DNA of 64,000 bases from positions 65,658,001 to 65,722,000 of the forward strand of contig NC_086109.1 of the NCBI RefSeq assembly GCF_963921235.1. The letters are read 5' to 3'. Each line of letters starts with the position of its first letter. Within the stretch, counting starts at the first letter, position 1. The translations under genes were made by a program, and so were the position numbers. This document shows positions 9,211 through 47,873 of the stretch, in pieces. Source of the stretch: Mobula hypostoma. Lineage: Eukaryota. The notes beneath the pieces are model-generated. The model saw nothing but the letters and a program-made list of their open reading frames with translations. It ran no database searches and was not told the DNA's origin.

Positions 9211-12084
9211 AGATCTCTTTTAAAACTTTCCCCTCTTGCCTTAAACCTATGCCTTCTGGTTTTGGACTCCCTTACACTGGGAAAAGGACTGTGACCATCC
9301 ACTTTTTTTTTTCCAAGGACATCTTCAATCTCTTATTGCTGCTGTCAGTGGTTCCCACATGCTTTAAAAGATGACTATCATACCAGTACCCAAGAAGATC
9401 AGGGAAGCTATCTTAATGACTATTGCCCATTTGCACTCACACCTACTGTGTGAAGTGCTTTGAGAGGTTATTCATGGTCAGAATCAATACCTACAGCGGA
9501 TGCAATCTCACTGGCTCTCCACTTGGCCTTGGATCTTCTGGACCATAGCAAAGCCTATTGATTATAGCTCAGCATTCAATACAACCATACCTTTAGTTCT
9601 AATCAAAAAGCTCCAAAACTTGAGCCTCTGAACGTCCTTCTGCAACTGGATCCTTGACTTCCTCACTGGGAGACCACAGACAGTGTGGATCAGAAATAAC
9701 ATCTACTCCTCACTGACAATCAACTTTGGTGCACCTCAAAGATATGTGCTCGGCCCACTGCCCTACTTTCTTTGCACTCATGGCTGTGTGGCTGGCTACA
9801 CATGAAGCACAGCAGTAAATTTGGCAATGATACAGCTTTTGTTGGCAGAATTTCAGATGGTGACGAGGAGTTGTACAGGAGTGGGTTAGATCAGCTGGTT
9901 GAGTGGTGTTGCAACAGCAACCTTGTACGCATTATCAGTAAGACCAAGGAATTGATTATGGACTTCAGGAAGGGGAAGTTGAGGGAATACAAACCAGTCC
10001 TTATTGAGGGATCAGCGGTGGAAAGGATGAGCAGTTTCAAGTTCCTGGGTGTCAACATCTCTGATGATCTATCCTGGGTCCAACATATTGATGCAATTAC
10101 AAAGAAGGCACCACAACAGCTATAATTCATTAGGAGCTCGAGGAGAAATGGTATGTCACCAAAGACCTGTAAATTTCTGCAGATGTACCGCAGACAGCGT
10201 TCTAACTGGTCTGGAATGGATATCGGGTGCAAGTTGAATAGGGACTTAACAATGGCATGTGGCAAAGGAAATGTCGCAGTAGTTATGGGGGATTTCAACA
10301 TGCATTTCAACATGAACTGGGAAAATCAGGTTGGTACTGGACCCCAGGATAGGGAGTTTGTAGAGTGCCTACGGGATGCATTTTTGGAGCAGCTTGTACG
10401 AGAGCTGACCAGGGATAAGGCTACTCTGGATTTAGTGTTGTGCAATGAACAGGATTTGATAAGTGAACTTGAAGTAAAGGAGCCATTAGGAGGTAGTGAC
10501 CATAATATGATAAGTTTTTATCTGCAAGTTGAGAGGGATAAGGGCAGATCAGAAGTGTCAGTATTGCAGTTGAACAAAGGAGACTATGGAGTCATGAGGG
10601 AGGAGCTGGCCAACGTTGACTGGTTGGATATCCTAGCAGAAAAGACAGTGGAACAGCAATGGCAGGTATTCTTGGGAATAATGCACAAGGTGCAAAATCA
10701 TTTCATCCCCCAGAGAAGGAAGGATTCAAAGGGGGGAAAGTGGCCACAGTGGTTGACAAAGGAAGTTAGAGATAGCATAGCATTAAAAAAGAAGTATAAC
10801 AGAGCTAAGGTGAGTGGGAAGACGGATGATTGGGAAATTTTTAAGGAGCAACAGAACTTAACTAAAAAGGCAATACGGGGAGAAAAACTGAGGTATGAAC
10901 ACAAGCTAGCTAGAAATATAAAGGAGGATAGCAAAGGTTTTTTTTAGGTATGTGAAGAGAAGGAAGACAGTTAAGAACAATGCTGGGCCCTTGAAGAATG
11001 AATTGGGAGAAATTGTTATGGGAAACAGAGAAATGGCAGACGAATTTAAGAAGTACTTTGGATCTGTCTTCACTAGGGAAAAGACACAAGCAATCTACCA
11101 GATGTATGGATGGGCCAAGGACATAGGGTAACAGAGGAACTGAAACAGATTGACATTAGGAAGGAAACAGTGATGAGTAGACTGATGGGACTGAAGGCTA
11201 ACAAATCCCCAGGTCCAGATGGTCTGCATCCTAGGGTACTAAAGGAGGTGGCTCTGGAAATTGCGGATGCATTGGTGATCATTTTCCAATGTTCCTTAGA
11301 TTCAGGATCAGTTCCTGAGGATTGGCAAATGGCTAATGTTATCCCACTTTTTAAGAAAGGAGGAAGGGAGAAAACAGAGAACTATCGCCCTGTTAGCCTA
11401 ACATCAGTAGTGGGGAAGATGCTGGAGTCCATTATTAAAGATGAAATAGCGGCATATCTTGATAGCAGTGATAGGATTGGGCCGAGCCAGCATGGATTTA
11501 CCAAGGGCAAATCATGCTTGACTAATCTATTGGAGTTTTTTGAGGATGTAACCAGGAAGATAGACGCGGGAGTTCCAGTGGATGTGGTCTACCTTGACTT
11601 TCAGAAGGCATTCAATAAGGTACCACAAAGGAGATTGGTGGGTAAAATCAGAGCTCATGGCATTGGGGGGAGGATATTGACATGGATAGAAAACTGGTTG
11701 GCAGATAGAAAGCAAAGGGTAGCAGTGAATGGGTGTTTCTCGGAATGGCAGGTGGTGACTAGTGGGGTGCCACAGGGCTCAGTATTGGGACCACAGCTGT
11801 TTACGATTTACGTCAATGATTTAGAGGAAGGCATTGTGAATAACATTAGCAAGTTTGCTGATGATACTAAGCTGGGTGGCAGTGTGACATGTGATGAAGA
11901 TGTTAGGAGAATTCAAGGTGACTTGGATAGGCTGGGTGAGTGGGCAGAAACTTGGCAGATGGCGTTTAATGTGAATAAGTGTGAGGTTATTCACTTTGGG
12001 AGCAAGAACAGGAAGGCAGATTATTATCTGAACGGTGTGGAGTTAGGTAAGGGAGAAATACAAAGAGATCTAGGAGTACTTGTT

Positions 12085-12216
12085 AACAACAGCAATTCTG
12101 CAGATGCTGGAAATTCAAGCAACACACATCAAAGTTGCTGGTGAATGCAGCAGGCCAGGCAGTATCTCTAGGAAGAGGTGCAGTCGACGTTTCAGGCCGA
12201 GACCCTTCGTCAGGAC
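12085..12216 (-). mobile_element. Short Penelope-derived insertion carrying a minimal hammerhead ribozyme motif
   Basis: Interrupts the CR1 RT between duplicated tgtt (12081-84 and 12217-20). Minus strand reads cagtc-CTGACGA-agg gtctcgg cct-GAAA-CG-TC-gactg (12218-12181). Confidence 0.8.
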
Positions 12217-12218
12217 TG
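12181..12218 (-). ncRNA. Minimal type I hammerhead ribozyme motif (intact core)
   Basis: CUGANGA and GAAA boxes, helix II AGG/CCU, palindromic ACGU helix III, GUC cleavage triplet, helix I CAGUC/GACUG. Confidence 0.7.
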
Positions 12219-13789
12219 TTCATCAGTCTCTGAAGGTGAATGAGCAAGTGCAGCAGGCAGTGAAGAAGGCTAATGGAATGATGGCCTTTATTACAAAGGG
12301 AATTGAGTACAAGAGCAAGGCAATCCTTTTGCATTTGTACAGGGCCCTGGTGAGACCACACCTGGAGTATTGTGTGCAGTTTTGGTCTCCAGGGTTAAGG
12401 AAGGACGTCCTGGCTGTGGAGGAGGTGCAGTGTAGGTTCACTACGTTAATTCCTGGGATGTCCGGACTGTCTTACGCAGAGAGGTTAGAGAGACTGGGCT
12501 TGTACACGCTGCAATTAAGGAGATTGAGGGGGGGATCTGATTGAGACAGATAAGATTATTAAGGGATTGGACAAGATAGAGGCAGGAAATATGTTCCAGA
12601 TGCTGGAAGAGTCCAGTACCAGAGGGCATGGTTTAAGAATAAGGGGTAGGTCATTTAGGACAGAGTTGAGGAGGAACTTCTTCTCCCAGAGAGTTGTGGA
12701 GGTGTGGAACGCGCTGCCTCAGAAGGCAGTGGAGGCCAATTCTCTGGATGCTTTCAAGAAGGAGCTAGATAGGTATCTTATGGATAGGGGAATCAAGGGT
12801 TATGGGGACAAGGCAGGAACCGGGTATTGATAGTAGATGATCAGCCATGATCTCAGAATGGCGGTGCAGGCTCGAAGGGCCGAATGGTCTACTTCTGCAC
12901 CTATTGTCTATTGAGAGTCCACTGAACCGGATTGGAAAAAGCTGCAGAAATTTGTAAACTCAGCCTGCTCCATCATGGGCTTTAGCCTCTCCAGCACTGA
13001 GGACACCTTCCAAAGGCAATGCCTCAGGAATTCATTAAGGACTCCCATCACTCAGTGTGTGCCCTCTTCTCACTGCTACATTCAAGTAGGAGGTACAGGA
13101 GCCTTCACTCACAACTCTGAATGATTGCACAATCTACAGACTCACTTTCAAGAACTCTGCAACTCATATTCTCAATATTATTTTTATTTGTAAAATTTAC
13201 CCATTCATTTCTCTTTAGAAGGTACAGATTGCCTTTCTTTTTCTAAAGGCAGTGAATTTCAGATTTTTACTCAACTAAATCTTTACATCCCTAACTAAAT
13301 CTTCATATCCCTCTACATCTTATATTCATTATTGATCCTTGAACTACTTGCTTATGTGTAATGTTTCTCTCTGTCCGATCTGACATAACCTGTTATGTAT
13401 TTATCGAACCTCCTCTCAGTATTCTTTGCCACAAGGAAAACAACCACAGCCTCTCCAGTCCATCCCTATAGCTGAAATCCCACAAATTGTAACTATCTGA
13501 CTCAACCTCTTCTCTGAAAGTTAAACACATGTACCAATGGAAATTGCAGTATTCTGCTTGATGCTCAGATTGATGGAACTTTGAATGATAAGGAAATCAA
13601 AGCATATTGAGTGTTGTTGAGTAAGTGAACAAGCCATGTCATTGAAAAGCATAGCATGGAAAATTTCATGCATAGTTAAATAGATTAAAAAACTCAAAAT
13701 AATATAAAGCCATCAGAAATGTGTATATCACTAACATAATGTCTGAATTCAAATGAATAGTTTTAGGGTCATAAAAGTTAGTGACCACT

Positions 13790-17100: not shown

Positions 17101-20100
17101 TGTTTTGTACAGTTTATAAATCTTGGAAAAATTCTACCTAACATGTTTTTTTTTGTTTGGCTGACGCTTATTGCACAGAATAGAGGTAGATCATTCAGCA
17201 GGACATGCAGGAGTCAGGATTGGAGATAGGCATGCACCAGACTAGGGAGGTATGGCAGAGTTCCGCCCTTGAAGGATGCTGGTGAACTAGACCACTAGAC
17301 TGAGGTTTATTTTCAACTATCCAGGACAACCATTGTGAATATCAAATAACCCTGTTTTGGGTTCAATGACTAAGCATTTGAAGCCTCCTGGTTAGGGAAT
17401 TCCAAAAATTCACCATCCTCTTGTTTAAGAAGTTTCTTATAATACCTGTCCTGAATTCCTGCCCCATATTTTCCAACTGTACTGAACACTGTTTCTATGA
17501 ACACCAGACTGGGGAAAGGACAACTTTGCATCTACCCCGTCAAGCCCCAGGAATTTTAAGTATCATCCCTGCAAACTGGGTTCAATTCTGCTGCTGTCTT
17601 TAAGGAGTTTGTAGTTTCACCCTGTGACTGTTGGTTTCTTCCAGATGCTTTGGTTCCCTCCCACATTCCAAAGACACATGGATTAGTAGGTTATTTAGCT
17701 GGATAGGTAATTGGGTGGTATGGGGATCATTGGGCCAATCTCTAAATTTACTGTTTGCCTTCCTAATTGCTTGGCAAACTTTCATGTTAACTTCAGTTGT
17801 TCCAGTAAAAGGATACTCAACTCATTCTGAAACCCCACATTTTTCAATCGCTCAGCAGTTAAAAACATACTCTGCTTTTCTATTGCCCAACCTCAATTTT
17901 TCCACATTGTTTCTTACTCAAAGCTTTTCTGTCTTCTTCCATGGAGATAGGCATAAAATTGTTGTTTAATTTCTCTGACATTTCGTTATCACTGAATATA
18001 ATCGCTCCCGTTTCAGATCGTAAGATATCCATATAAACTTTTAACTGATCTTTTTCGTCTTTTCAACATAAATCTTCTTGTTTTTATGCTTTTCAATAGA
18101 CTTCTTTTGTATTCTGTTTTCTTTTTTTAACAACATCCTCAAGGTTAAAAGTAAATTTAATATCAAAGTATATACCTGTCACCATACACATTTTCTTGCA
18201 GGCATACTCAATAAATCCAATAACCATAGTAGAATCGATGAAAAACCGCACAAACTGGGTGAACAACCAGTGTGCAAAAGACAATAGACTGTGCAAATAC
18301 AAAAAGAAAGTATAAATGACTGAATCAATGTATAAACAAACAAACGAGCAACCAATAGATATTGAGAACATAATGAAGAATCCTTGAAAGTGAGTCCATA
18401 GGTTGTTGGAACATTTCAGAGATGGGGCAAGTGAAATTAACCCCTTTGGTTCAAGAGCCTGATGGCTGAGGGGTAATAACTGTTCCTGAACCTACTGGTG
18501 TGAATCCTGACACTCCTGTACCATCTTCCTGATTTCAGCAGCAAGAAGAGAGCATGGCCTGACTGGTGCCCCTGATGATGGATGCTGCTTTACTGCAACA
18601 ATGCTCCATGTAGATGTGCTCAATGGTGTGGAGGGTTTTACCCATGATGGGCTGAGCTGTATCCAATACTTATAGGATTTTTCACTCAAAGGCCAGTCAA
18701 TATACTCTCCACCACACATCTATAGAAGTTTGTCAAAGTTTTAGGTGTCATGCCAAATCTTCACAAACTCCTAGGGAAGTAGATGCACTGCTGTATGTTC
18801 TTTATAATTGTACTTACAAGCTCGGCCCAGGACAGTTCCTCTGAAATTATAACACCAGGAAATTTAAAGTTTCCATCCCTGTCCACTTCTGATCCCCTGA
18901 TGAGGACTGGCTCATGGACCTCCAGCTTCCTCCTCCTTGGAGTCTATAATCAGCTCCTTGGTCTTGCTGACATTGAGTAAGAGGTTGTTATTATTGCACC
19001 AATCAGTCCCCCTCCTATATGCTGATTCATCACCACCTTTGATTTGGCTAATGGCAGTGGTGTCGTCAGCAGACTTGAATATGGCATTGAAGCTGTGCTT
19101 AGCTATGCAGTCATAGGTGTAAAGTGAGTAGAGCAGGATGCTAAGTACACAGCCTTGTGGTGCACCAGTGCTGATGGAGGTTATGGAGGAGATGTTGCCA
19201 ATCCATACTGACTGGGGTTTGAAAGTGTGGAAATCGTGGATCCAATTGCACAAGGAGGTATTGAGGCTAAGGTCTTGAAGCTTAATGATTAGTTTTGAGG
19301 GGATGATAGCATTGAAAGCCAAGCTGTAGTTGATAAAGATCATCTTGATGCATGCATCTTTACCATCCAGATGTTACAGGCTTGAGTGAAGATCCAATGA
19401 GATTGCATCTGCTGTGGCCCTTTTGTGCTGGTAGGCAAATTGGAACAGATCCAAATCACTTCTCTGAAAGGATTTGATATGTTTCATCACCACCTTCTCA
19501 AAACACTTCATCACTGTGGATGTAAGTGCTGTTGGATGATAGTCATTTAGGCAGGTTACCACATTCTTAGGCACCGGTATAATCGAAGCCTGCTTCAAAC
19601 AGGTCGGTACCTCAGACTGCCAAAGTAAGAGGTTGAAGATCTCAGTGAACAGTCTAGTCAGTTAATCAACACAGGTCTTTAGTACTTGGTCTATCTGGGC
19701 TGGATGCTTTCCATGGGTTCACCTTCCTTACAATTTGCTCACACCTTGGCCTCAGAGACTGAAGTCACAGGATCATCAGGGGCTGTGGGAGTTCAGAAAG
19801 GTTCCTGTATAATTTGACAGTCAAAGTGAGCATAGAAAAGCATTGAGCTCATCTGGAAGTGAAGCACTGTTGTCACTTTGCCTCTTGATTTTACTTTAAA
19901 AGAGGTGAATGTATTCAAAGCTATGCCACAACTGATGAGCGTCCGACATTGATTCATGTTTTGTCCGGAATTGCCACTTCACCTATGAGATGGCTTTCCA
20001 GTGACCTTACGTGGACCTCTTGTAACTTCCTTGGTCACTAGACATAAATACCTTTGACCTGGCCGTTAGTAGATTATGGATCTCATGGTTCATCCAGGGC

Positions 20101-20853
20101 TTCTGATTGGGGAAATCTCTAAATAATTTTATGAGGACACACTGGTCCACAACGGTTTTTATAATGTCCATGACAACCATGGTGAATTTACTCAGATCCA
20201 CAAATGAGTCCTTGAACAGAGCCCTAAACACTGACTTGAAACAATCCCATAGCTGCTCCTCTGTCTCCGTGACCACCTGTTGTCCTATTCTCTGGAGCCT
20301 TGCTCTTTAGCCTCTTCCTGTACGCAGGTAGGAGAAGGACAGCCAAGTGATCAGATTTCCAAAGGTGCCTTCTGGGCATGGAACAGTAAGCATTCCTTAT
20401 CTTCGTATAACAGTGGTCTAGTGTTTCGGGACCTTGGGAGCTACAGGCTATATGCTGATGGTAATTGGGCAGCAATTTCTTTAAATAAGCCAGATTGAAA
20501 TCCCCGACTATGATATGGAATAGCATTCAGATGGACAGTTTCTTGTTTGATAATCGCTCATGAAGTATCTCAAGTCCCTGATTACAATCGGCCGCTGGTG
20601 GTATGTCAGCTGTGGTCAGGATCACGGAGGAGAACTCCCTTGGTAAATAGAATGGACGACATTTGTTTGATCATTAGATGTTCAAGATCAGGGGAACACA
20701 AGTTCAACAAAACCACCACATAGAGTTCATCATGAAACACACACCTCTGTCTCTTGCCTTTTCTGAATCCACAGTTCAGTCCATCCTGTGTATTTAGAAG
20801 CTTTCAAGTCTGATTGCCGTATTTGGCATGCTGGGAGTAAGCCATGTCTCAGT

Positions 20854-21311
20854 CAGTCAGTGGGTGCCGTCCCAAATCCAGGGTTGGCGGCTATGCACTT
20901 CCATCTTCTTCGATCTTGTGACAGCAGTGAGTACAGCCTCTCCTCCAGCTTGTTCTCGCTGGCCGCCTTGGCACCGCCTGCTGCCGCCCCCGCCAAACTT
21001 GAGCGTCCAGCCGCGGCTGCTTCTTCGAGCTCGGCCCTTCCTTAGGTGGAGGCCTTGGGCAGGTCCAGGCACACGGTGCAGCGCCCAAGTTCATCATGTC
21101 TCTTCTAACTAGGTGCATAGCATACGATTCGTAGATATGTGGTGAGGCTTTAATCTCTTCCACAGAAGATGGCCTTTGGCTTACAAGGAGTTCATCCGTC
21201 CTTTGTCAGTTCTTGTTTTTCTCAGTCCTGCTGGGTGTCTTCACACCCTCCTCACCAGACTGTCCGGTGGGGGAGCTGGCCTAAGTCGCCGACTATAGCC
21301 CCTGGCCGAGC
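20854..21311 (-). mobile_element. 458-bp chimeric non-autonomous retroposon with an RTE-like 3' end and a captured host-gene fragment
   Basis: 13-bp TSD gccatgtctcagt (20841-20853 and 21312-21324). The 3' part encodes QDRRRWKCIAANPGFGT followed by an (ACTG)n tail. Confidence 0.75.
20921..21082 (-). pseudogene. ZFTRAF1: Circularly permuted fragment of ZFTRAF1/CYHR1 N-terminal coding sequence
   Basis: Minus strand: gc TGC ACC GTG TGC CTG GAC CTG CCC AAG GCC TCC ([11 protein letters not shown]) precedes ...[12 protein letters not shown]+t. Joining the two ends restores [22 protein letters not shown], matching recalled ZFTRAF1 [22 protein letters not shown]. Confidence 0.85.
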
Positions 21312-21789
21312 GCCATGTCTCAGTAAAACGCAGAATAAAACAATTTCTCATTTCTCTTCAATACACTAATCTTGCCCTCAGGTCCTCAATCGTTCTCCAG
21401 CGACTACATATTTGCAAACAAGATGCTGCGTTAGAGGAGGACTCATTTTTTTTTTGTGTTTCAGCCTGGCTTGGAATACCTCTGTCCTGCCTTGCTTCCA
21501 GCCATAGTGATGGACCTTTGCTTAAAAATGCTGTACCTGCTTGCTTGAGAGTTAAATCTACCCAGTTCTTCAGATGATCGTGGGATCTGTAGTTCATTAA
21601 GTCGATTTAAAAGTACATCGCTTGAAGGGAAATTACATGCTGTAGACTGTAGTGAGAGTAATTCAAAAGAAGATTATTTACTGGTCTTCTTCTGTTGAAT
21701 TCTGTAACTTATCAATTTTCAGGTTTAATGCTTCATTTGGCATCACAGCCTGCCTTTTGTTTTGCTCTACTACATTCAACTTCTGGACA

Positions 21790-31844: not shown

Positions 31845-32743
31845 AGTTCACATTGGTGAGACCATCATAAATTGGGGGACTGCTTCGTTGAACACCTGCG
31901 CACCATCTGCCACAAGCAGGATTTCCTGACAGCCAAATATTTTTATTCTGATTTGCATTCCCTTTCGGACATAGCAGTACAAAGCCTCCACTCGTGCCAA
32001 GATGAGGCCACCTTCAGGGTAGAGGAGCAGCACCCTATATTTTGTCTGGGTAGTCTCCAGCCTGGTGGCAAGAATATCAATTTCTCCTTCCAGTATTCAA
32101 ATTTTCCCTCCTTCCCTTCTTCCTCCATTCCTCATTCTGACCTTTTAGCTCTTCTCACCTGCCTGTTACTTCCCCCTGGGTCCCATCCTCCTTCCCTTTC
32201 TCTTATGGTCCACTCTCCTGTCCTATCAAATTCGTTGTTGTCCAGCCCTTGACCTTTAACACCCACCTGGCTTCACCTATCACCTTCCAGCTAACCTCCT
32301 TCACCCCCACCACCCGACAAACTTTTTATTCTGGCAACTTCACCCTTCTCAGTCCTGAAGAAGAGTCTTAGTCCAAAATGTCAACTATCTATTCATTTCA
32401 TGGCCAAGTGGTTAAGGCGTTCGTCTAGTGATCCGAAGGTCGCTAGTTCAAACCTTGGCTGAGGCAGCGTGTTGTGTCCTTGAGCAAGGCACTTAACACA
32501 TTGCTCTGAGACAACACTGGTGCCAAGCTGTATGGGTCCTAATGCCCTTCCCTTGGACAACATTGGTGGCGTGGAGAGGGGAGACTTGCAGCATGGGCAA
32601 CTACCAGTCTTCCATACAACCTTGCCTGGGCCTGCACCCTGGAAACCTTCCAAGGGGCAAATCCATGGTCTCACTAGACTAATGGATGCCTATCTTAATA
32701 CCTTATCTATTCATTTCAATCAATGCTGCCTGACTTGCTGAGT
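31845..32743 (+). mobile_element. Penelope-like element 3' end (GIY-YIG C-terminus + pLTR), hit by a SINE and a CR1
   Basis: HIGET...GDCFVEHLRTICHK...EEQHPIFCLGSLQPGGKNI; the tail resumes at ~34047 after the CR1. Confidence 0.85.
32401..32703 (+). mobile_element. tRNA-head SINE with an RTE-like tail
   Basis: A box TGGCCAAGTGG, B box GTTCAAACC, 15-bp TSD tatctattcatttca (32386-32400 and 32704-32718). A second copy lies at ~45157-45410. Confidence 0.85.
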
Positions 32744-32759: not shown

Positions 32760-34046
32760 TGTGAAAGGAAAATCATATCTGACGAATCTCATAGAATTTT
32801 TTGAGGATGTAACTAGTAATGTGGATAGGGGAGAACCAGTGGATGTGGTATATTTGGATTTTCAAAAGGCTTTTGACAAGGTCCCACACGGGAGATTAGT
32901 GTGCAAACTTAAAGCACACGGTATTGGGGGTATGGTATTGATGTGGATAGAGAATTGGTTGGCAGACAGGAAGCAAAGAGTGGGAATAAACGGGACCTTT
33001 TCAGAATGGCAGTCAGTGACGAGTGGGGTACTGCAAGGCTCAGTGCTGGGACCCCAGTTGTTTACAATATATATTAATGACTTAGACGAGGGAATTAAAT
33101 GCAGCATCTCCAAGTTTGCGGATGACACAAAGCTGGGTGGCAGTGTTAGCTGTGAGGAGGATGCTAAGAGGATGCAGGGTGACTTGGATAGGTTAGGTGA
33201 GTGGGCAAATTCATGGCAGATGCAATTTAATGTGGATAAATGTGAGGTTACCCACTTTGGTGGCAAGAACGGGCAAACAGATTATTATCTGAATGGTGGT
33301 CGATTAGGAAAAAGGGAGGTGCAACAAGACCTGGGTGTCATTGTACACCAGTCATTGAAAGTGGGCATGCAGGTACAGCAGGCAGTGAAAAAGGCAAGTG
33401 GTATGCTGGCATTTATAGCGAGAGGATTCGAGTACAGGAGCAGGGAGGTACTACTGCAGTTGTACAAGGCCTTGGTGAGACCACACCTGGAGTATTGTGT
33501 GCAGTTTTGGTCCCCTAATCTGAGGAAAGACATTCTTGCCATAGAGGGAGTACAAAGAAGGTTCACCAGATTGATTCCTGGGATGGCAGGCCTTTCATAT
33601 GAAGAAAGACTGGATCGGCTAGGCTTATACTTTCTGGAATTTAGAAGATTGAGGGGCGATCTTATTGAAATGTATAAAATTCTAAAGGGATTGGACAGGC
33701 TAGATGTAGGAAGATTGTTCCCGATGTTGGGGAAGTCCAGAACAAGGGGTCACAGTTTGAGGATAAAGGGGAAGCCTTTTAGGACCGAGATGAGGAAAAA
33801 CTTCTTCACACGGAGAGTGGTGAATCTGTGGAATTCTCTGCCACAGGAAACAGTTGAGGCCAGTTCATTGGCTATATTTAAGAGGCAGTTAGATATGGAC
33901 CTTGTAGCTAAAGGGATTGTGGGTATGGAGAAAAGGCAGGTACAGGGTTCTGAGTTGGATGATCAGCCATGATCGTACTGAATGGCGGTGCAGGCTCGAA
34001 GGGTGGAATGGCCTACTCCTGCACCTATTTTCTATGTTTCTGTGTT
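32760..34046 (+). mobile_element. Young 5'-truncated CR1 LINE (403-aa uninterrupted RT C-terminal ORF)
   Basis: ORF 32761-33972: YLDFQKAFDKVPH, QGSVLGP, KFADD, LVRPHLEYCVQFW; (CTATGTTT) tail. Confidence 0.95.
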
Positions 34047-40799: not shown

Positions 40800-43700
40800 T
40801 GCAGGTTTCCGCACATAAAACAAAGTGAGGCATTTTATGTTTAACGAAACCCATAGCACATTTTATTGAACTCCCTAACTTACACAACAAAAGCACGATC
40901 AAAAACCTTTGTTCATAATGACGTCATCACGTCGGACCAGTCTCTTAAAATGAAAACCCAACTCAACGTCAGTGGTTGTGATTTCTCTCAGTTACGTTAC
41001 CCTACACAGGCCCCCCCCCCCCCGATATTCACTAAAACCAGCATTGTGCGCCTGTCTGTAATTCGGACGAACTGCCTGGTGCGGGTCCTACGTTCCGTGG
41101 GTAGAGGAACAATGGGTGTCTTGTCCAGAGGTGCACTGCATGCTCATGGTTATGTTGTGATGTTAGGGGCATGGTAGCAGAATACTTGGCCGGTTTAAGG
41201 TGATCTACCGAAATATGTTCAGGTTTACCCCTCTTTTCGATAAAAGTCTTTTCTCCCCATTCGAAAATACAAAATGGGCCATCATTAGGGGCCTAAGGGG
41301 ATGTTGGTGTGCCTCATGGTGGGTGAAAACAAATGAGGCAGAACGTAGGTCAACAGGAAGCCAAGAGTGTTGTACACCATGATGTGGGGTAGGAATAGGT
41401 GAAAAGGGATTGAATTTACTGAGGAGGGTGGAAGGCTGCTGAGGCTGACCCAGGCGGTCGTAGTGACAGGAATGAAATCACCTGGCACGCGTAACGGCTG
41501 CCTGTTTACTAATTCAGCCACGGACGACTGCAGGTCCTCTTTTGGAGCTGTTCTGAGCCCTAGCTGGACTCACGGGAGACGATCATGCCAGCACTCGTCC
41601 ATCAGGGAAGCCCTCAGAGCAGCCTCCAATGGGCGGGGAAACCACTCACATAGGCCGTTGGCTGTGGTGTGATGTAGCCTAACGCCAAGGATCTGGGCCA
41701 TCGCAGCCCAGAGGTCAGAAATTGAATTTGGGACCGTGGTCAGAGGAAATATCAAATGGGATGGCACGCTGAGCAACCTAGGTGCTGATGAACACCAAGC
41801 CATGTCTGTGGCCGTCGTCGTCCCCTGGCCATCTGGGGAGAGGGCGACCGGTTGAGACATTGCACAGCAGAGAGACACCAGTTTCCCTGAACTTAATGTC
41901 AGCCAACCGCAGGCCCATGACTGCTGTTCAGTAAGACTGGACCTCTGAGTCAGTAACTTGGTCAACTGCCATGCCGGCATAGTCAGCCCCTACGTGTATG
42001 GCCTCAACAGCTGGCCATTAGAGGCAAGAAGCTGCAGCATTATTTTTCCCTTTGATATGTTGTATATCCATTGTGAACTCAGATATGTTGGCCAGGTGAC
42101 ATTGCTGTCGTGCAGACCTAGGTTCTGATATCTTGGCCTTCATGCACACAAGGGGTTTGTGGTCAACGAACGCTGTGAAATGGCAGCGTCCTAGAAGAAA
42201 ACAAAAATGGCGGACAGCCAGAAAGAGTCCAAGAAGCTCGCAGTCAAACGTGCTGTACTTCGTTTCAAGCGGATAGAGCTGCCGGCTGAAGAAGGTGAGT
42301 GACTGCCACACGCCTCCAATCAATTGTTCATGCACAGCACCCATACCATAGTCTGAGGCATCAAGAGTAATGCTATGGGTGCACTGGGAAGTGGGTGCGC
42401 CAGTAAAGTTGTGTTAGAAAGAGCTCGTTTGATATCATCAAATGCCCTGGTCATGTCCACGGACGAGTCAAGCATCTGATTGGGGTATTGTCTTTAAGCG
42501 CACTATACAGAGGGAGCATAAGTTCAGCAGCTCGCGGAATGAAGCGGTGATAGAAATTTACGACACCTGGAAACTTGTGTGGTTTTTTTTGTAGTGTGTG
42601 GGTCAGTGGGAAATCCATAATAGTGGCTACTTTTGAAGGGAGGGGATTTGGACCTTCTGCAGAGAACCGATGGTCGAACAAGTCAGTAGTTGACAACCCA
42701 AAATGGCACTTAGCAGGGTCAATAACAATCAACCCATGTTAGCTTAAGCACTTGAAAAGTGTGCGGAGCTGAGATACGTGTTCAGATTTGGACACAGTGG
42801 TGACAAGTATGTCAGCCAGGTAAACAAAAAGGAAATGTAATTCTTTTAATACAGAGTTGGTAAGTCTGTGCTGCATTTTTCAGTTCAAATGGCATGTGCC
42901 GAAGCTCAAAAAGGCCAAACAGGTTTATCACAGCTGTTTTAGGAATGTCCTCTGAGCACACAGGCACCTAATGGTAGCGCCTAACTAGATTGACTTTGGA
43001 AAAATTGACTTTCTGGCTAAACGTGCTGATAAGTCCTGAATGTGTGGGACTGAGTAATGATTGGGGGTTGTGGCCATTGGACATAAGGAGGGGTGAAGTC
43101 CAGGGGCTATTCAGCTGGTGCAAAAATGCCGAGTCCTTCCAAGTTGGCAAACTCAGCCTTCGCAGTGCCAGCTATTCTGGGTTCAGCTGACCCATGTGGG
43201 CACGAACTGGCGGGCCAGTCATGGGAATGTGGTGCTCAACCCCATGTTTGGCGACTGTAGTGGAGAATGTGGGTTTGGTGAGGTCTGGGAATTTTCCCAG
43301 TAGTTGAACGAACTCCCATGCAGTGGTGCATGTGCTTGACAGAGTCGTTGTGGAGGACTTACTGGGGAAGCAGGTGAATAATCCAAAGTCCTGATGTCCA
43401 CAAGCAAGCAGTTCTTAAGGTCCACCAACCGTCCTTGGGCACACAGGAAGTCTGCACCAAGCAGAGGTCTAGCCACTTTAGCCAGGACAAAGTCCCATGT
43501 GTAACGTCGGCCACTGAAGCAGGGTGTCACCAATCATGTCCCATAAGTCTGGATATTGCTGCCATTGGCAGTCTCCAGCGAGGTCTCGTTGTCACATGAA
43601 TAGGTGATGCTGGTAGCACACTCACTTGAGCACCTGTGTCACACGGGAAGCATCACCCTGAAAGGGAGTCTGAAATGAACAGTAGGCGATCCTGGCGGCT

Positions 43701-44696
43701 GGAACCCACGGTGTTCACAGACCTCTGATGACCCAGTGTGCTGGCACTGACAAAGCTGCAAGGCGGCTGGCACTTCCTAGCATTCGTAGCAAAGCACAGG
43801 CCTGGTCATTTGTTTGGCAGCTATGGGTATCCTTATGCTGGGGGCCTTGCTGACCAGGTTTATTGAAGTAGAGAAAGGAAGAGGAATGATGCACTACTGC
43901 CTAGCCGAGTGTAGGCTATCAGCCATCTTAGCAAACCCTATAGTTCATCACGGGTACATTAGCAAGGGCTATATGAACTGGAGTGGGAATTTGCTGCATG
44001 AAGAATTCTTTGAAAATAAAACACTGATGGTGATTTCCCAGGAGAGACAGCATGTGGTCCATTAGCTCCACGGGGTCACCATCACCGAGGCTAGGCAAGG
44101 AGAGCAGCTGTTTGGTGCTCTCAGACCCTGATAATCCAAAAATCTGTAAAAGGTGAGCTTTCAGTGAACGGTATTTATCGTGTTCAGGTGAGTGTTCTAG
44201 TAGATTCACCACTCTGGCCGCACGCTCGCTGGAGCATCTGTGTCAGACAGGAAGCATCACCCTGAAAGAGAGTCTGTAATGAGCAGTAGATGACCCTACC
44301 TAACATAGAAATGTTAGGTGCTGCTGGCGGAGATTTCTCATAGAGCAATCCGGACCTCAGCTTGTATGAACAAAATGGTGCCATTTTGCTCCCAAAACTC
44401 TGGCAGTTTCAAAGTGACTGCGTTGGCCGACATACAGTATTCAATAACTCCAGAATCATCCTAGAGCGTCAGAGTCACCAATGTAGGTTTCTGCAAATAA
44501 AAGGAAGTGGGGCGTTTTATGTTTCATGAAACCCATGACACATTTTATTGAACTCCCTAACTTAAACAACAAAAGCACGCTAAAAATCTTTTACATAATA
44601 ATGTTGTCACATCAGACCAGTCTCTTAAAATGAAACCCTTCTTAAAATTCAGTGGTTGTGAATTATCCACATTTCTCCCACGTACATTACCCTACA
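40800..44696 (-). mobile_element. Degenerate Gypsy/Ty3 LTR retrotransposon with both LTRs
   Basis: TG...CA LTRs at 40800-41006 and 44482-44696; 4-bp TSD gcag. PBS TGGTGACtCtGACG (tRNA-Trp-like) just inside the right LTR; G-run PPT at ~41010-41023. Remnants of gag (43928-44212), protease (DTGAQVS; LLGADFL), RT (VYLADIL), RNase H (YSTFDCELLG...VDHKPL) and integrase (ANGLCEWF). Confidence 0.92.
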
Positions 44697-45879: not shown

Positions 45880-46785
45880 ATACACACAAAGTACTCTGCA
45901 GATGCTGGGGTCAAAGCAGCACTCACAACATGCTGGAGGAACTCAGCAGGTCAGGCAGCATCCGTGGAAATGATCAGTCAAAGTTTTGGGCCGGAACCCT
46001 TCGTCAGGACTGTAGAGGGAAGGGGCAGAGGCCATGTAAAGAAGGTGGGGGAGGGTGGGAAGGAAAAGGCTGGTAGGTTCCAGGTGAAAAACCAGTAAAG
46101 GGAAAGATAAAGGGGTGGGGGAGGGGAGGCAGGGAGGTGATAGGCAGGAAAGGTGAAGAAGGAATAGGGGAAAACACAGTGGGTGGTAGAAGGAGGCAGA
46201 ACCATGAGGGAGGTGATAGGCAGCTGGAGGAGGGGGCAGAGTGAAATAGGGATAGGGGAAGGGAGAGGGAGGGCATTACTGGAAGTTGGAGAATTCTATG
46301 TTCATACCAAGGGGCTAGAGACTACCTAGACAGTATATGAGGTGCTGCTCCTCCAACCTGAGTTTAGCCTCATCATGGCAGTAGAGGAGGCCATGTATGG
46401 ACATATCCGAAAGAGAATGTGAAGCAGAGTTCAAATGTGTGGCAACCGGGAGATCCTGTCTGTTGTGGCGGATGGAGCGGAGGTGCTCGACGAAGCGGTC
46501 CCCCAGTCTGCGTCGGGTTTCACTGATGTAGTGGAGGCCGCACCGGGAGCACTGAATGCAATAGATGACCCCAACAGACTCAGAAGTGAAGTGTTGCTTC
46601 ACCTGGAAGGACTGTTTGGGGCCCTGAATAGTGCCAAGAGAGGAGGTGTAGCACTTCCGCTTACAGGGGATAAGTGCCGGGTGGGAGATCCGTGGGGAGG
46701 GACCGATCCCTGCAGAAAGTGGAGAGGGGTGGAGGGGGAAAGATGTGCTTAGTGGTGGGGTCCAGTTGAAGGTGGCATGAAGGTG
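45880..46785 (-). mobile_element. Penelope-like element (GIY-YIG domain + pLTR)
   Basis: ORF 46315-46821 GVIYCIQCSRCGLHYISETRRRLGDRFVEH...LEEQHLIY; hammerhead at ~45975-46012 with GAAA changed to AAAA. Confidence 0.9.
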
Positions 46786-47873
46786 AACATCATTCACATT
46801 CATCCCAAATGGATCCACCACCTAATCTGGAATATGCAAATCCAGCAGGTCTCTGAACCGAAATTCCTATCAGTGCGCAGTTGATTCAAATGTTCAAGGT
46901 ATACAATCAGATCATCATCTTGCAATTCTATTTTAAGAGTGCCAGTGAAGGAAATCACATAAATGTGATGTTCGGTATTGTTGCAGAAAAGTTTGAGTTT
47001 TCAAAGCCATTATATTTTCCAGCAGAATATTATTTCCTAAGAAATAGTTCTTGACTTCTTCAAAAATAGTTTCACCTTTGGTATCTGTTTTAAGCTTTCA
47101 AGCAAAATGTATTCTCTCACTGGTCTAATCGTCAATCTAAAACCTAACATAGGTCATCAGGAGGGCTTCATTATCTTGTAATGTGCTTTCATCGATTTGC
47201 AGGCCAAACTTCTTAACTTGCAGTTGTGTAACTAGTTGTTTTTCCACATCATCTGACATTTCATCAATACACCTTGATACTGATGAGTTGCTCAAGAGGA
47301 TGGATGGTTTGAATGCTTTCAAATGTGCTGTGATTCATAACAGTAGAAATTGCAACAGAAACTTCAGGCAGAATCAATGATTCACCCACAGTACGTGGCT
47401 TGCCAGCTTTTACAATTAAATTTGAAATCTCATAGGATGCAAGTAAACTTTTGTCTATCTTAGCTGCATTTTCACTAAACATTTGCTTTACGTTCGGCCT
47501 TGATTGAAAATTATCAGGCGGTTTTTTGAAGTAATCCAGTGTTTTATCTTCCTTGTCCTTATGTGCTGTCTTCAAGTGTTTCCTCAGCTGACATGGCCAC
47601 ATGCTTTCATTTGAGTGCGTGGTCATACAAATTAGACACAATGGCATCCTCTTGACCTGTGCAGATGGAATAAATAACGCCATGGGCAAGATACCAAATG
47701 GAAAAATGCCAACAATAGTTCTTTGCCTTAGTAGCCATGGATAATTTCATAGAAAAATAAAGAAAATTTTAAAATAAAGAAAAAAATGTGTGTATGTGCA
47801 TGTGTGTGCGTGCATGTGTGTGCATGCGTGCGTGCATCTTTCATGTCTTTATATGGTGGCCAGTGGTGTAGTA

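What the first reader, a model, noticed from the sequence alone, without database searches (positions are those of the whole stretch)
20841..21324. Chimeric RTE-tailed non-autonomous retroposon that mobilises the captured gene circle
SEEN: a 458-bp insert splits the FTETWL motif of an old Rex/Babar endonuclease and has a perfect 13-bp TSD. Minus-strand layout: ~230 bp non-coding leader, the 162-bp permuted ZFTRAF1 block, a ~67-bp end encoding QDRRRWKCIAANPGFGT, and an (ACTG)n tail that overlaps the target sequence actgag. KNOWN: RTE-clade LINEs end in a DRxxW C-terminus and short tandem-repeat tails, make long TSDs, and give rise to 5'UTR+3'end bipartite derivatives. INFERENCE: the circle was captured where the LINE's internal ORF was lost, and the chimera then moved as one unit by target-primed reverse transcription. 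If multicopy, this would be a SINE-like family spreading a host exon fragment, possibly a source of antisense or small RNAs against ZFTRAF1.
Basis: partly seen in the sequence, partly recalled or inferred. Interest (0 to 1): 0.75.

Follow-up and report, generated by a model that had tools for sequence, protein, structure and literature searches.

The report
Retroposon copy carrying a swapped exon piece
A 458-base jumping-gene copy with no genes of its own landed as one piece inside an older dead jumping gene of a ray, carrying a slice that reads like a host gene's first exon with its halves swapped; the scan's earlier notes, unchecked here, call it one copy of an abundant family.

Summary
Window 20854-21311 (minus strand) is a 458-bp insert flanked by a perfect 13-bp target-site duplication. 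Removing it restores the endonuclease frame of an old LINE. The insert ends in two ACTG units that run on in register into the first five bases of the duplicated target. That, with T runs just upstream, is the mark of target-primed reverse transcription, so leader, block and tail arrived as one unit.

An RTE-type partner is likely but unproven. The last 22 codons stay open, hold a DRxxW motif and reach their stop inside the tetramer repeat, which fits RTE. No partner LINE could be fetched.

The copy-number test failed. 

The scan found this before on other DNA: at least eight other windows of this devil-ray genome hold the same permuted block, and follow-ups there call the family abundant.

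New here: the first 55 bases fit an HDV-like ribozyme topology starting at base 1. This is suggestive only (0.8% background, descriptor set after seeing the sequence).

The parts
21312..21324 (-). Target-site duplication, copy at the element's 5' side (ACTGAGACATGGC on the element strand)
   Evidence: 13 of 13 identical to 20841-20853; the neighbouring bases differ on both sides.
21325..21341 (-). Target context upstream of the duplication. On the element strand, T at positions -1 to -4, and at -8, -10, -11 and -13 to -16.
   Evidence: sequence. It matches the T stretch about one helical turn upstream that is reported for RTE-related retroposons (PMC6007223). This is a single site, so anecdotal.
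21257..21311 (-). Candidate HDV-like ribozyme (element nt 1-55). P1 is nt 1-8 (C4 bulged) with 31-37; P2 is 11-15 with 51-55; P3 is 17-19 with 28-30; L3 is 20-27; P1.1 is 22-23 with 39-40; there is almost no P4; the candidate catalytic C is nt 50.
   Evidence: My own descriptor hits exactly at the element's first base. It hits 4 of 1000 dinucleotide shuffles and 0.8% of all start positions in the window. The descriptor was loosened after I had seen the sequence. No Rfam model matches. Status: suggestive only.
21083..21311 (-). Non-coding leader, 229 nt
   Evidence: stops in all three sense frames. No tRNA and no Rfam family. Folding z-score -1.8. No similarity elsewhere in the window.
20921..21082 (-). 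A short first piece is followed, after an in-frame stop, by a longer piece that ends ...[11 protein letters not shown].
20862..20920 (-). LINE-like coding 3' end, frame SQDRRRWKCIAANPGFGTAP, open up to the tail
   Evidence: The stop codon TGA falls within the ACTG repeat itself, so the 3' UTR is essentially only the repeat. This is the RTE-clade trait stated in PMC1291365. No special fold (z -0.6).
20854..20861 (-). Tail: two ACTG units, continued in register by ACTGA of the target
   Evidence: Five bases of in-register microhomology with the first bases of the duplication.
20841..20853 (-). Target-site duplication, copy at the element's 3' side
18912..21600 (-). Host of the insertion: an old, stop-ridden LINE with an APE-type endonuclease followed by reverse transcriptase
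   Evidence: frame restored across the empty site; FTETWL, GDFN and SDH motifs. (RVT_1, E 1.9e-09 at 18912-19343).

Best explanation
This is one copy of a non-autonomous retroposon that depends on a LINE and most likely uses an RTE-clade LINE's machinery.

Shown: its RNA consisted of a non-coding leader, a 162-nt host-exon-like block and the last 59 nt of a LINE reading frame, ending in ACTG repeats. It was copied into a staggered cut in an old LINE. The nicked target strand annealed to the ACTG repeats and primed reverse transcription, and a 13-bp target-site duplication resulted. All three modules therefore moved together.

Inferred: the partner is of RTE type. The block was taken up once in a master copy in place of the LINE's reading frame. 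[quoted passage not shown] By the scan's earlier notes, which I could not check, the same chimera occurs in many other places in this devil-ray genome.
For: - Perfect 13-bp duplication around the whole 458 bp.
- Host endonuclease frame restored on excision.
- Tail repeat in register with the target's first five bases.
- No EN or RT domain and no long sense ORF in the insert.
- The frame with DRxxW stays open until a stop inside the tetramer repeat. This is the short, repeat-made 3' UTR that characterises RTE (PMC1291365).
- The duplication length lies within the 7-15 bp RTE range, its first base is A, and there are Ts about 10 nt upstream (PMC6007223).
- The tail matches none of the other LINE sequence in the window, including the CR1-like copies at 10.1-12.5 kb and 32.8-34 kb and the host LINE.
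- An HDV-like topology starts at base 1. HDV-like ribozymes at the 5' junction are known for RTE, and forms without P4 are known (PMC3774820).
- Leads only: scan notes of at least 8 other windows with the same block inside RTE-tailed inserts.
Against: - Family status and the RTE label rest on indirect traits and unchecked notes.
- ACTG is not AT-rich, unlike the classic RTE tails.
- DRxxW near the C-terminus is, to my knowledge, not unique to RTE.
- The single-site target signature is anecdotal.
- The ribozyme fold needs a bulge in P1 and a weak P3, has G-C instead of the usual G-U at the base of P1, competes with two stable hairpins, and is missed by every Rfam model.
Confidence: 0.65

Rival explanations
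1. It is the same kind of element, but its partner is not an RTE-clade LINE. The tail would come from another clade that ends in short tandem repeats, such as L2, CR1 or Rex1.
For: No RTE LINE was found to share the tail. ACTG is not the AT-rich repeat typical of RTE. Overlap of the 3' end with the target is also reported for the CR1 and L2 clades.
Against: As far as I know, LINEs of those clades have long 3' UTRs, while here a protein-like frame runs into the repeat. The 13-bp duplication, A at its first base and Ts near -10 fit the RTE pattern. The tail matches none of the CR1-like or Rex1-like LINE copies in the window.
Confidence: 0.2
2. It is a one-off chimeric retrocopy. During a single target-primed reverse transcription at this site the enzyme jumped from a LINE RNA end to a host RNA (or RNA circle) and then to a third RNA, so no family exists.
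For: Nothing similar was found in the window or in any collection I could reach. Template jumping is a known property of LINE enzymes (my knowledge).
Against: The scan's first-stage reader independently noted the same permuted block inside RTE-tailed inserts in at least 8 other windows of this genome, and follow-ups there report hundreds to thousands of copies (unchecked by me). The collections I searched do not hold ray repeats, so those blanks carry no weight.
Confidence: 0.08
3. The block entered this copy in place, after a leader-plus-tail element had already inserted, for example as a small DNA circle repaired into a break.
For: The block is GC-rich and sharply bounded.
Against: There is no second duplication or repair scar at the block's edges. 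The scan notes say the block is in the family consensus (unchecked).
Confidence: 0.04

Closest known systems
SVA_F1 (human, MAST2 exon 1) and pt_SVA_D6 (chimpanzee, STK40 exon 1) (PMC6139936)
   Same: [quoted passage not shown] The chimera then spread as a subfamily.
   Different: In SVA the exon is colinear, sits at the 5' end, was acquired by splicing, and the partner is L1 with a poly(A) tail. Here the piece is internal, reads as permuted, ends in the middle of a codon rather than at a splice site, and the tail is a tetramer repeat.
RTE-related short retroposons: Au-like SINEs, AfroSINEs, Bov-tA, horse SINE2-1_EC (PMC6007223)
   Same: A short element with a LINE-derived 3' end and microsatellite tail. 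The duplication is no longer than 13-15 bp, its first base agrees with the tail repeat, and there are Ts about 10 nt upstream.
   Different: Those have a Pol III (tRNA-type) head. None is detectable here. Sharing of the tail with an RTE LINE is shown for them and not shown here.
circRNA-derived pseudogenes, e.g. the 33 circRFWD2-derived copies in mouse (PMC4897178)
   Same: Genomic copies that hold pieces of one gene in non-colinear order, lack a poly(A) tail, occur in many copies and are associated with retroelements.
   Different: In those the junction is an exon-exon back-splice. Here the pieces appear to come from one first exon. A first exon has no upstream acceptor site, so ordinary back-splicing does not explain it (inference; the native gene was not seen here).
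Ribozyme-headed RTE elements: HDV-like at RTE 5' junctions (PMC3774820); twister with Perere-3 (PMC8501958)
   Same: The target-site duplication abuts the predicted cleavage site, and the candidate fold starts at the element's first base. Architectures with little or no P4 are documented.
   Different: No Rfam model matches. P1 is bulged, with a G-C base pair in place of G-U. There is no covariation or cleavage evidence.

Membership tests
LINE-dependent non-autonomous retroposon inserted by target-primed reverse transcription | Target-site duplication around the whole insert, and the pre-insertion site restored on excision | tested here: met
LINE-dependent non-autonomous retroposon inserted by target-primed reverse transcription | 3' tail that overlaps the target (priming by microhomology) | tested here: met
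   Two ACTG units continue in register into ACTGA of the duplication.
LINE-dependent non-autonomous retroposon inserted by target-primed reverse transcription | No endonuclease or reverse transcriptase of its own | tested here: met
   Stops in all sense frames of the leader. The 62-aa open frame has no Pfam domain.
LINE-dependent non-autonomous retroposon inserted by target-primed reverse transcription | Many dispersed copies with different flanks | not testable with these tools
The protein, metagenome and scan-sequence look-ups cannot see ray repeats. The scan notes say yes.
RTE-clade-mobilised short retroposon | 3' end shared with an RTE-clade LINE of the same genome | not testable with these tools
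   No partner was fetched.
RTE-clade-mobilised short retroposon | Very short 3' UTR made of 3-5-nt repeats (PMC1291365) | tested here: met
   The frame is open to the tail and the stop lies inside the ACTG repeat. The repeat is not AT-rich.
RTE-clade-mobilised short retroposon | Duplication of 7-15 bp; first base agrees with the tail repeat; Ts about 10 nt upstream (PMC6007223) | tested here: met
   13 bp; A first; T at -10, -11 and -13 to -16. This is one site only, so weak.
SINE in the strict sense | Head derived from tRNA, 5S or 7SL with a Pol III promoter | tested here: not met
   ARAGORN finds none. Rfam finds none, even at E up to 10.
HDV-like self-cleaving ribozyme | Nested double pseudoknot (P1, P2, P3, P1.1) with a C in J4/2, starting at the cleavage site | tested here: inconclusive
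   My descriptor hits at base 1. It hits 4 of 1000 shuffles and 0.8% of window positions. The descriptor was post hoc, P1 is bulged and P3 is weak.
HDV-like self-cleaving ribozyme | Match to a curated HDV-type covariance model | tested here: not met
   No hit at E up to 10 on 281 nt.
HDV-like self-cleaving ribozyme | Covariation among copies; self-cleavage | not testable with these tools
   No other copies are in hand, and this needs bench work.
Retrocopy of a circular RNA (back-splice type) | Pieces of one gene in reversed order, joined at exon boundaries | not testable with these tools
   The two pieces share one frame and their outer ends fit as adjacent codons. The native gene was not available, and places 21047-21084 were barred from searches.

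The most novel reading that the evidence does not exclude
A ribozyme-headed, RTE-dependent retroposon family replaced its reading frame with a one-turn copy of a small circle (DNA or RNA) that came from the CpG-rich first exon of ZFTRAF1. The module was kept because it helps the element's expression, as the MAST2 exon does in SVA_F1. The family would then be a multiplied fossil of a circle that re-entered the germline genome.
Probability: 0.15. Interest if true: 0.75.

Novelty: new variant of a known kind. Interest (0 to 1): 0.42.

Why it matters
Non-autonomous retroposons that pick up host exons are known from SVA. One that carries an exon piece in circularly permuted order would be a multiplied record of a small circle, or of a one-turn copying event, entering the germline. 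That would give a way to study how such circles form and how LINE enzymes switch templates. This particular copy adds a clean insertion site: an exact duplication, an in-register tail and a restored host frame. These show that the chimera moves as a unit. It also adds a candidate self-cleaving head. As a locus it is ordinary: one more copy of something the scan has already met several times.

Tried and rejected
Depth, other copies and presence in relatives were therefore not seen.
- Word search with the 62-aa minus-strand frame and the 63-aa plus-strand frame, both beside the barred places: no hits.
- Full phmmer search of 1.84 billion representatives with the 62-aa frame: only one spurious tandem-repeat protein. 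A 12-residue conserved stretch and a 22-residue LINE end are too short for this to count against ZFTRAF1 or RTE.
- ESM Atlas: nothing.
- Pfam on the frame: nothing.
- Metagenome scan with a 19-mer from the tail: six contigs that match only those 19-20 bases. These are chance hits.
- Scan look-ups by sequence: blank.
- tRNA or Pol III head: rejected.
- A strict HDV descriptor with an unbulged P1: no hit.
- A special fold of the tail: none.
- A paralogous empty site for the host LINE in the window: none.
- Not attempted because barred: any search with letters or translation of 21047-21084. This also ruled out the 90-, 94- and 71-aa ORFs that cross those places.

Full report
**What is there.** On the plus strand, GCCATGTCTCAGT stands at 20841-20853 and again at 21312-21324. 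The bases next to each copy differ, so the repeat is exactly 13 bp. Between the copies lie 458 bp (20854-21311) with no second copy in the 64-kb window (blastn, word size 7).

Exact direct repeats of 13 bp or more at 50-1000 bp spacing are not rare here: 11 in the window against 1.2 in shuffles, several probably from other insertions. The repeat alone proves little. Two further facts settle it:
- Removing the insert and one repeat copy restores a continuous minus-strand reading ...CFILRFTETWLTPSMPN.... The GDFN and SDH motifs of an APE-type endonuclease follow, and then reverse transcriptase (RVT_1, E 1.9e-09).
- On the minus strand the insert ends in ACTGACTG, and the duplicated target begins ACTGA. 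The repeat therefore runs on in register for five more bases, about 1 in 1000 by chance.

The host's Rex/Babar label was not tested beyond these motifs.

**Anatomy on the minus strand.**
- Leader, 21311-21083 (229 nt). It has stops in all frames, no tRNA and no Rfam family, even at E up to 10.
- GC-rich block, 21082-20921 (162 nt).
- Coding-like end, 20920-20862. Its frame reads SQDRRRWKCIAANPGFGTAP.
- Two ACTG units, 20861-20854. The frame's stop codon is formed inside this repeat, so there is essentially no 3' UTR apart from the repeat.

In the translation printed, the block's two pieces lie in one frame. The end of the second piece and the start of the first piece fit together as adjacent codons, which is what an exact circular permutation of one coding stretch would give.

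**A limit I had to respect.** Local scripts either masked them or used only the pieces beside them.

Three things were therefore not tested here: the identity of the block with ZFTRAF1/CYHR1, its base-exact permutation, and the copy number of the element. The longer piece of the block alone found nothing in:
- Pfam
- the word search
- the full phmmer search (one spurious repeat protein)
- the ESM Atlas

With only about 12 conserved residues, these blanks mean little.

**How it got there.** The duplication encloses leader, block and tail together, and there is no second scar at the block's edges. The three modules therefore entered in one event. The in-register overlap of the tail repeat with the first bases of the duplication is what is expected when the nicked target strand anneals to the repeat at the RNA's 3' end and primes reverse transcription (model in PMC6007223). 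On the element strand the duplication starts with A, is preceded by TTTT, and has Ts at -10, -11 and -13 to -16. Nishiyama and Ohshima report for RTE-related retroposons:
- duplications mostly 7-15 bp, and not above 13 bp in the animal sets they analysed
- a first base that agrees with the tail repeat (A for most animal RTEs)
- a T stretch about ten bases upstream

This site fits all three, but it is a single site.

**Is the partner an RTE?** The RTE clade is characterised by unusually short 3' UTRs made of trimer to pentamer repeats (PMC1291365). Here a protein-like frame with a DRxxW motif runs into a tetramer repeat, which fits. To my knowledge L2 and CR1 LINEs have long 3' UTRs, which does not fit. 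The tail also matches none of the LINE sequence in the window, including the CR1-like copies at 10.1-12.5 kb and 32.8-34 kb and the host LINE itself.

Against the RTE label: ACTG is not AT-rich, DRxxW is to my knowledge not exclusive to RTE, and I could not fetch any LINE that shares the tail. I put the RTE label at roughly two in three.

**The leader.** The scan's notes say that other RTE-derived short elements in this genome begin with HDV-like or twister ribozymes, so I tested the head.
- A strict HDV descriptor found nothing.
- I then allowed one bulge in P1. The first 55 nt now satisfy the nested double-pseudoknot order exactly from base 1:
  - P1: nt 1-8 with 31-37
  - P2: nt 11-15 with 51-55
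  - P3: nt 17-19 with 28-30
  - L3: 8 nt (20-27)
  - P1.1: nt 22-23 with 39-40
  - a C at nt 50
  - almost no P4
- This descriptor hits 4 of 1000 dinucleotide shuffles and 0.8% of all start positions in the window.
- HDV-like ribozymes cutting at the 5' junction are known for RTE, and forms without P4 are known (PMC3774820).

I relaxed the descriptor after seeing the sequence. P3 is weak, the base of P1 is G-C rather than G-U, two stable hairpins compete with the fold, and no Rfam model sees it. I call it a candidate, at about even odds.

**Family status.** I could not obtain a second copy. The collections I could reach do not hold ray repeats, and scan look-ups by sequence were blank. The only first-hand hint is that runs of six organism labels share some exact 31-mers with the 1-kb stretch. 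I could not tell whether those words lie in the insert or in the host LINE.

The scan found this before on other DNA. Twelve findings name ZFTRAF1/CYHR1. At least eight are in other windows of this devil-ray genome (species), each with a 165-180-bp permuted block. Most sit inside RTE-tailed inserts of about 290-570 bp. Their follow-ups report hundreds to thousands of copies and presence in related species. Those are unchecked AI notes and I use them as leads.

**Comparison with known things.**
- The nearest analogue is SVA_F1 and pt_SVA_D6. These are non-autonomous, LINE-driven elements that took up a GC-rich first exon of a host gene and then spread. That exon can act as an internal promoter (PMC6139936). 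Unlike them, the piece here is internal, permuted and not bounded by a splice site.
- circRNA-derived pseudogenes also show reversed order, lack poly(A) tails and are associated with retroelements (PMC4897178). Their junction is a back-splice between exons. A first exon has no acceptor site, so ordinary back-splicing does not explain this case.
- A circle opened at one point, or copied for exactly one turn, would give an exact one-unit permutation. That remains inference.
- The element is not a SINE in the strict sense, because it has no Pol III head.
- The block lies in sense orientation in the element's RNA, so the antisense or small-RNA idea has no support here.

**Verdict.** The chimera moved as one unit by target-primed reverse transcription. 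It is a new variant of a known kind and, as a locus, one more copy of something the scan already holds.

Noticed in passing
window 32386-32718: A 303-bp insert (32401-32703) is flanked by a perfect 15-bp direct repeat. By eye its first bases look like a tRNA with box A and box B, but ARAGORN calls no tRNA and Rfam gives nothing at gathering score. Probably a decayed tRNA-type SINE copy.
   Followed up: partly
window 10153-12544 and 32761-33972, plus strand: Two LINE copies with long open frames: Exo_endo_phos_2 and RVT_1 at 10.1-12.1 kb, and RVT_1 at 32.8-34.0 kb. Their C-terminal regions look CR1-like by eye. Neither shares the tail of the element studied here.
   Followed up: partly
whole window: Eleven exact direct repeats of 13-19 bp at 50-1000 bp spacing, against 1.2 expected. 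Examples are 48478/49017, 58715/59325, 59691/60180 and 63225/63717. Some may be target-site duplications of other short insertions.
   Followed up: no
window 43626-44270: The 19-bp repeat at 43646/44250 is preceded on both sides by similar but imperfect sequence. It looks like a roughly 604-bp tandem duplication rather than an insertion.
   Followed up: no
window 20600-21600 (run table): Four small runs (105-170 million letters) from one study of the source organism hold 50-82% of the sampled words of this 1-kb stretch. The tool guesses they are RNA but has no record of it. If they are RNA, the locus lies in a transcribed region. I could not lay reads to check.
   Followed up: no
window 46315-46821 (minus) and 31872-32252 (plus): Two ORFs share a motif-rich stretch (...RLGDRFVEHLRS...H...EA..R.EEQHLI..LGSL). 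By eye it resembles a GIY-YIG-type endonuclease of Penelope-like elements. Pfam gave no hit at E 0.001.
   Followed up: partly
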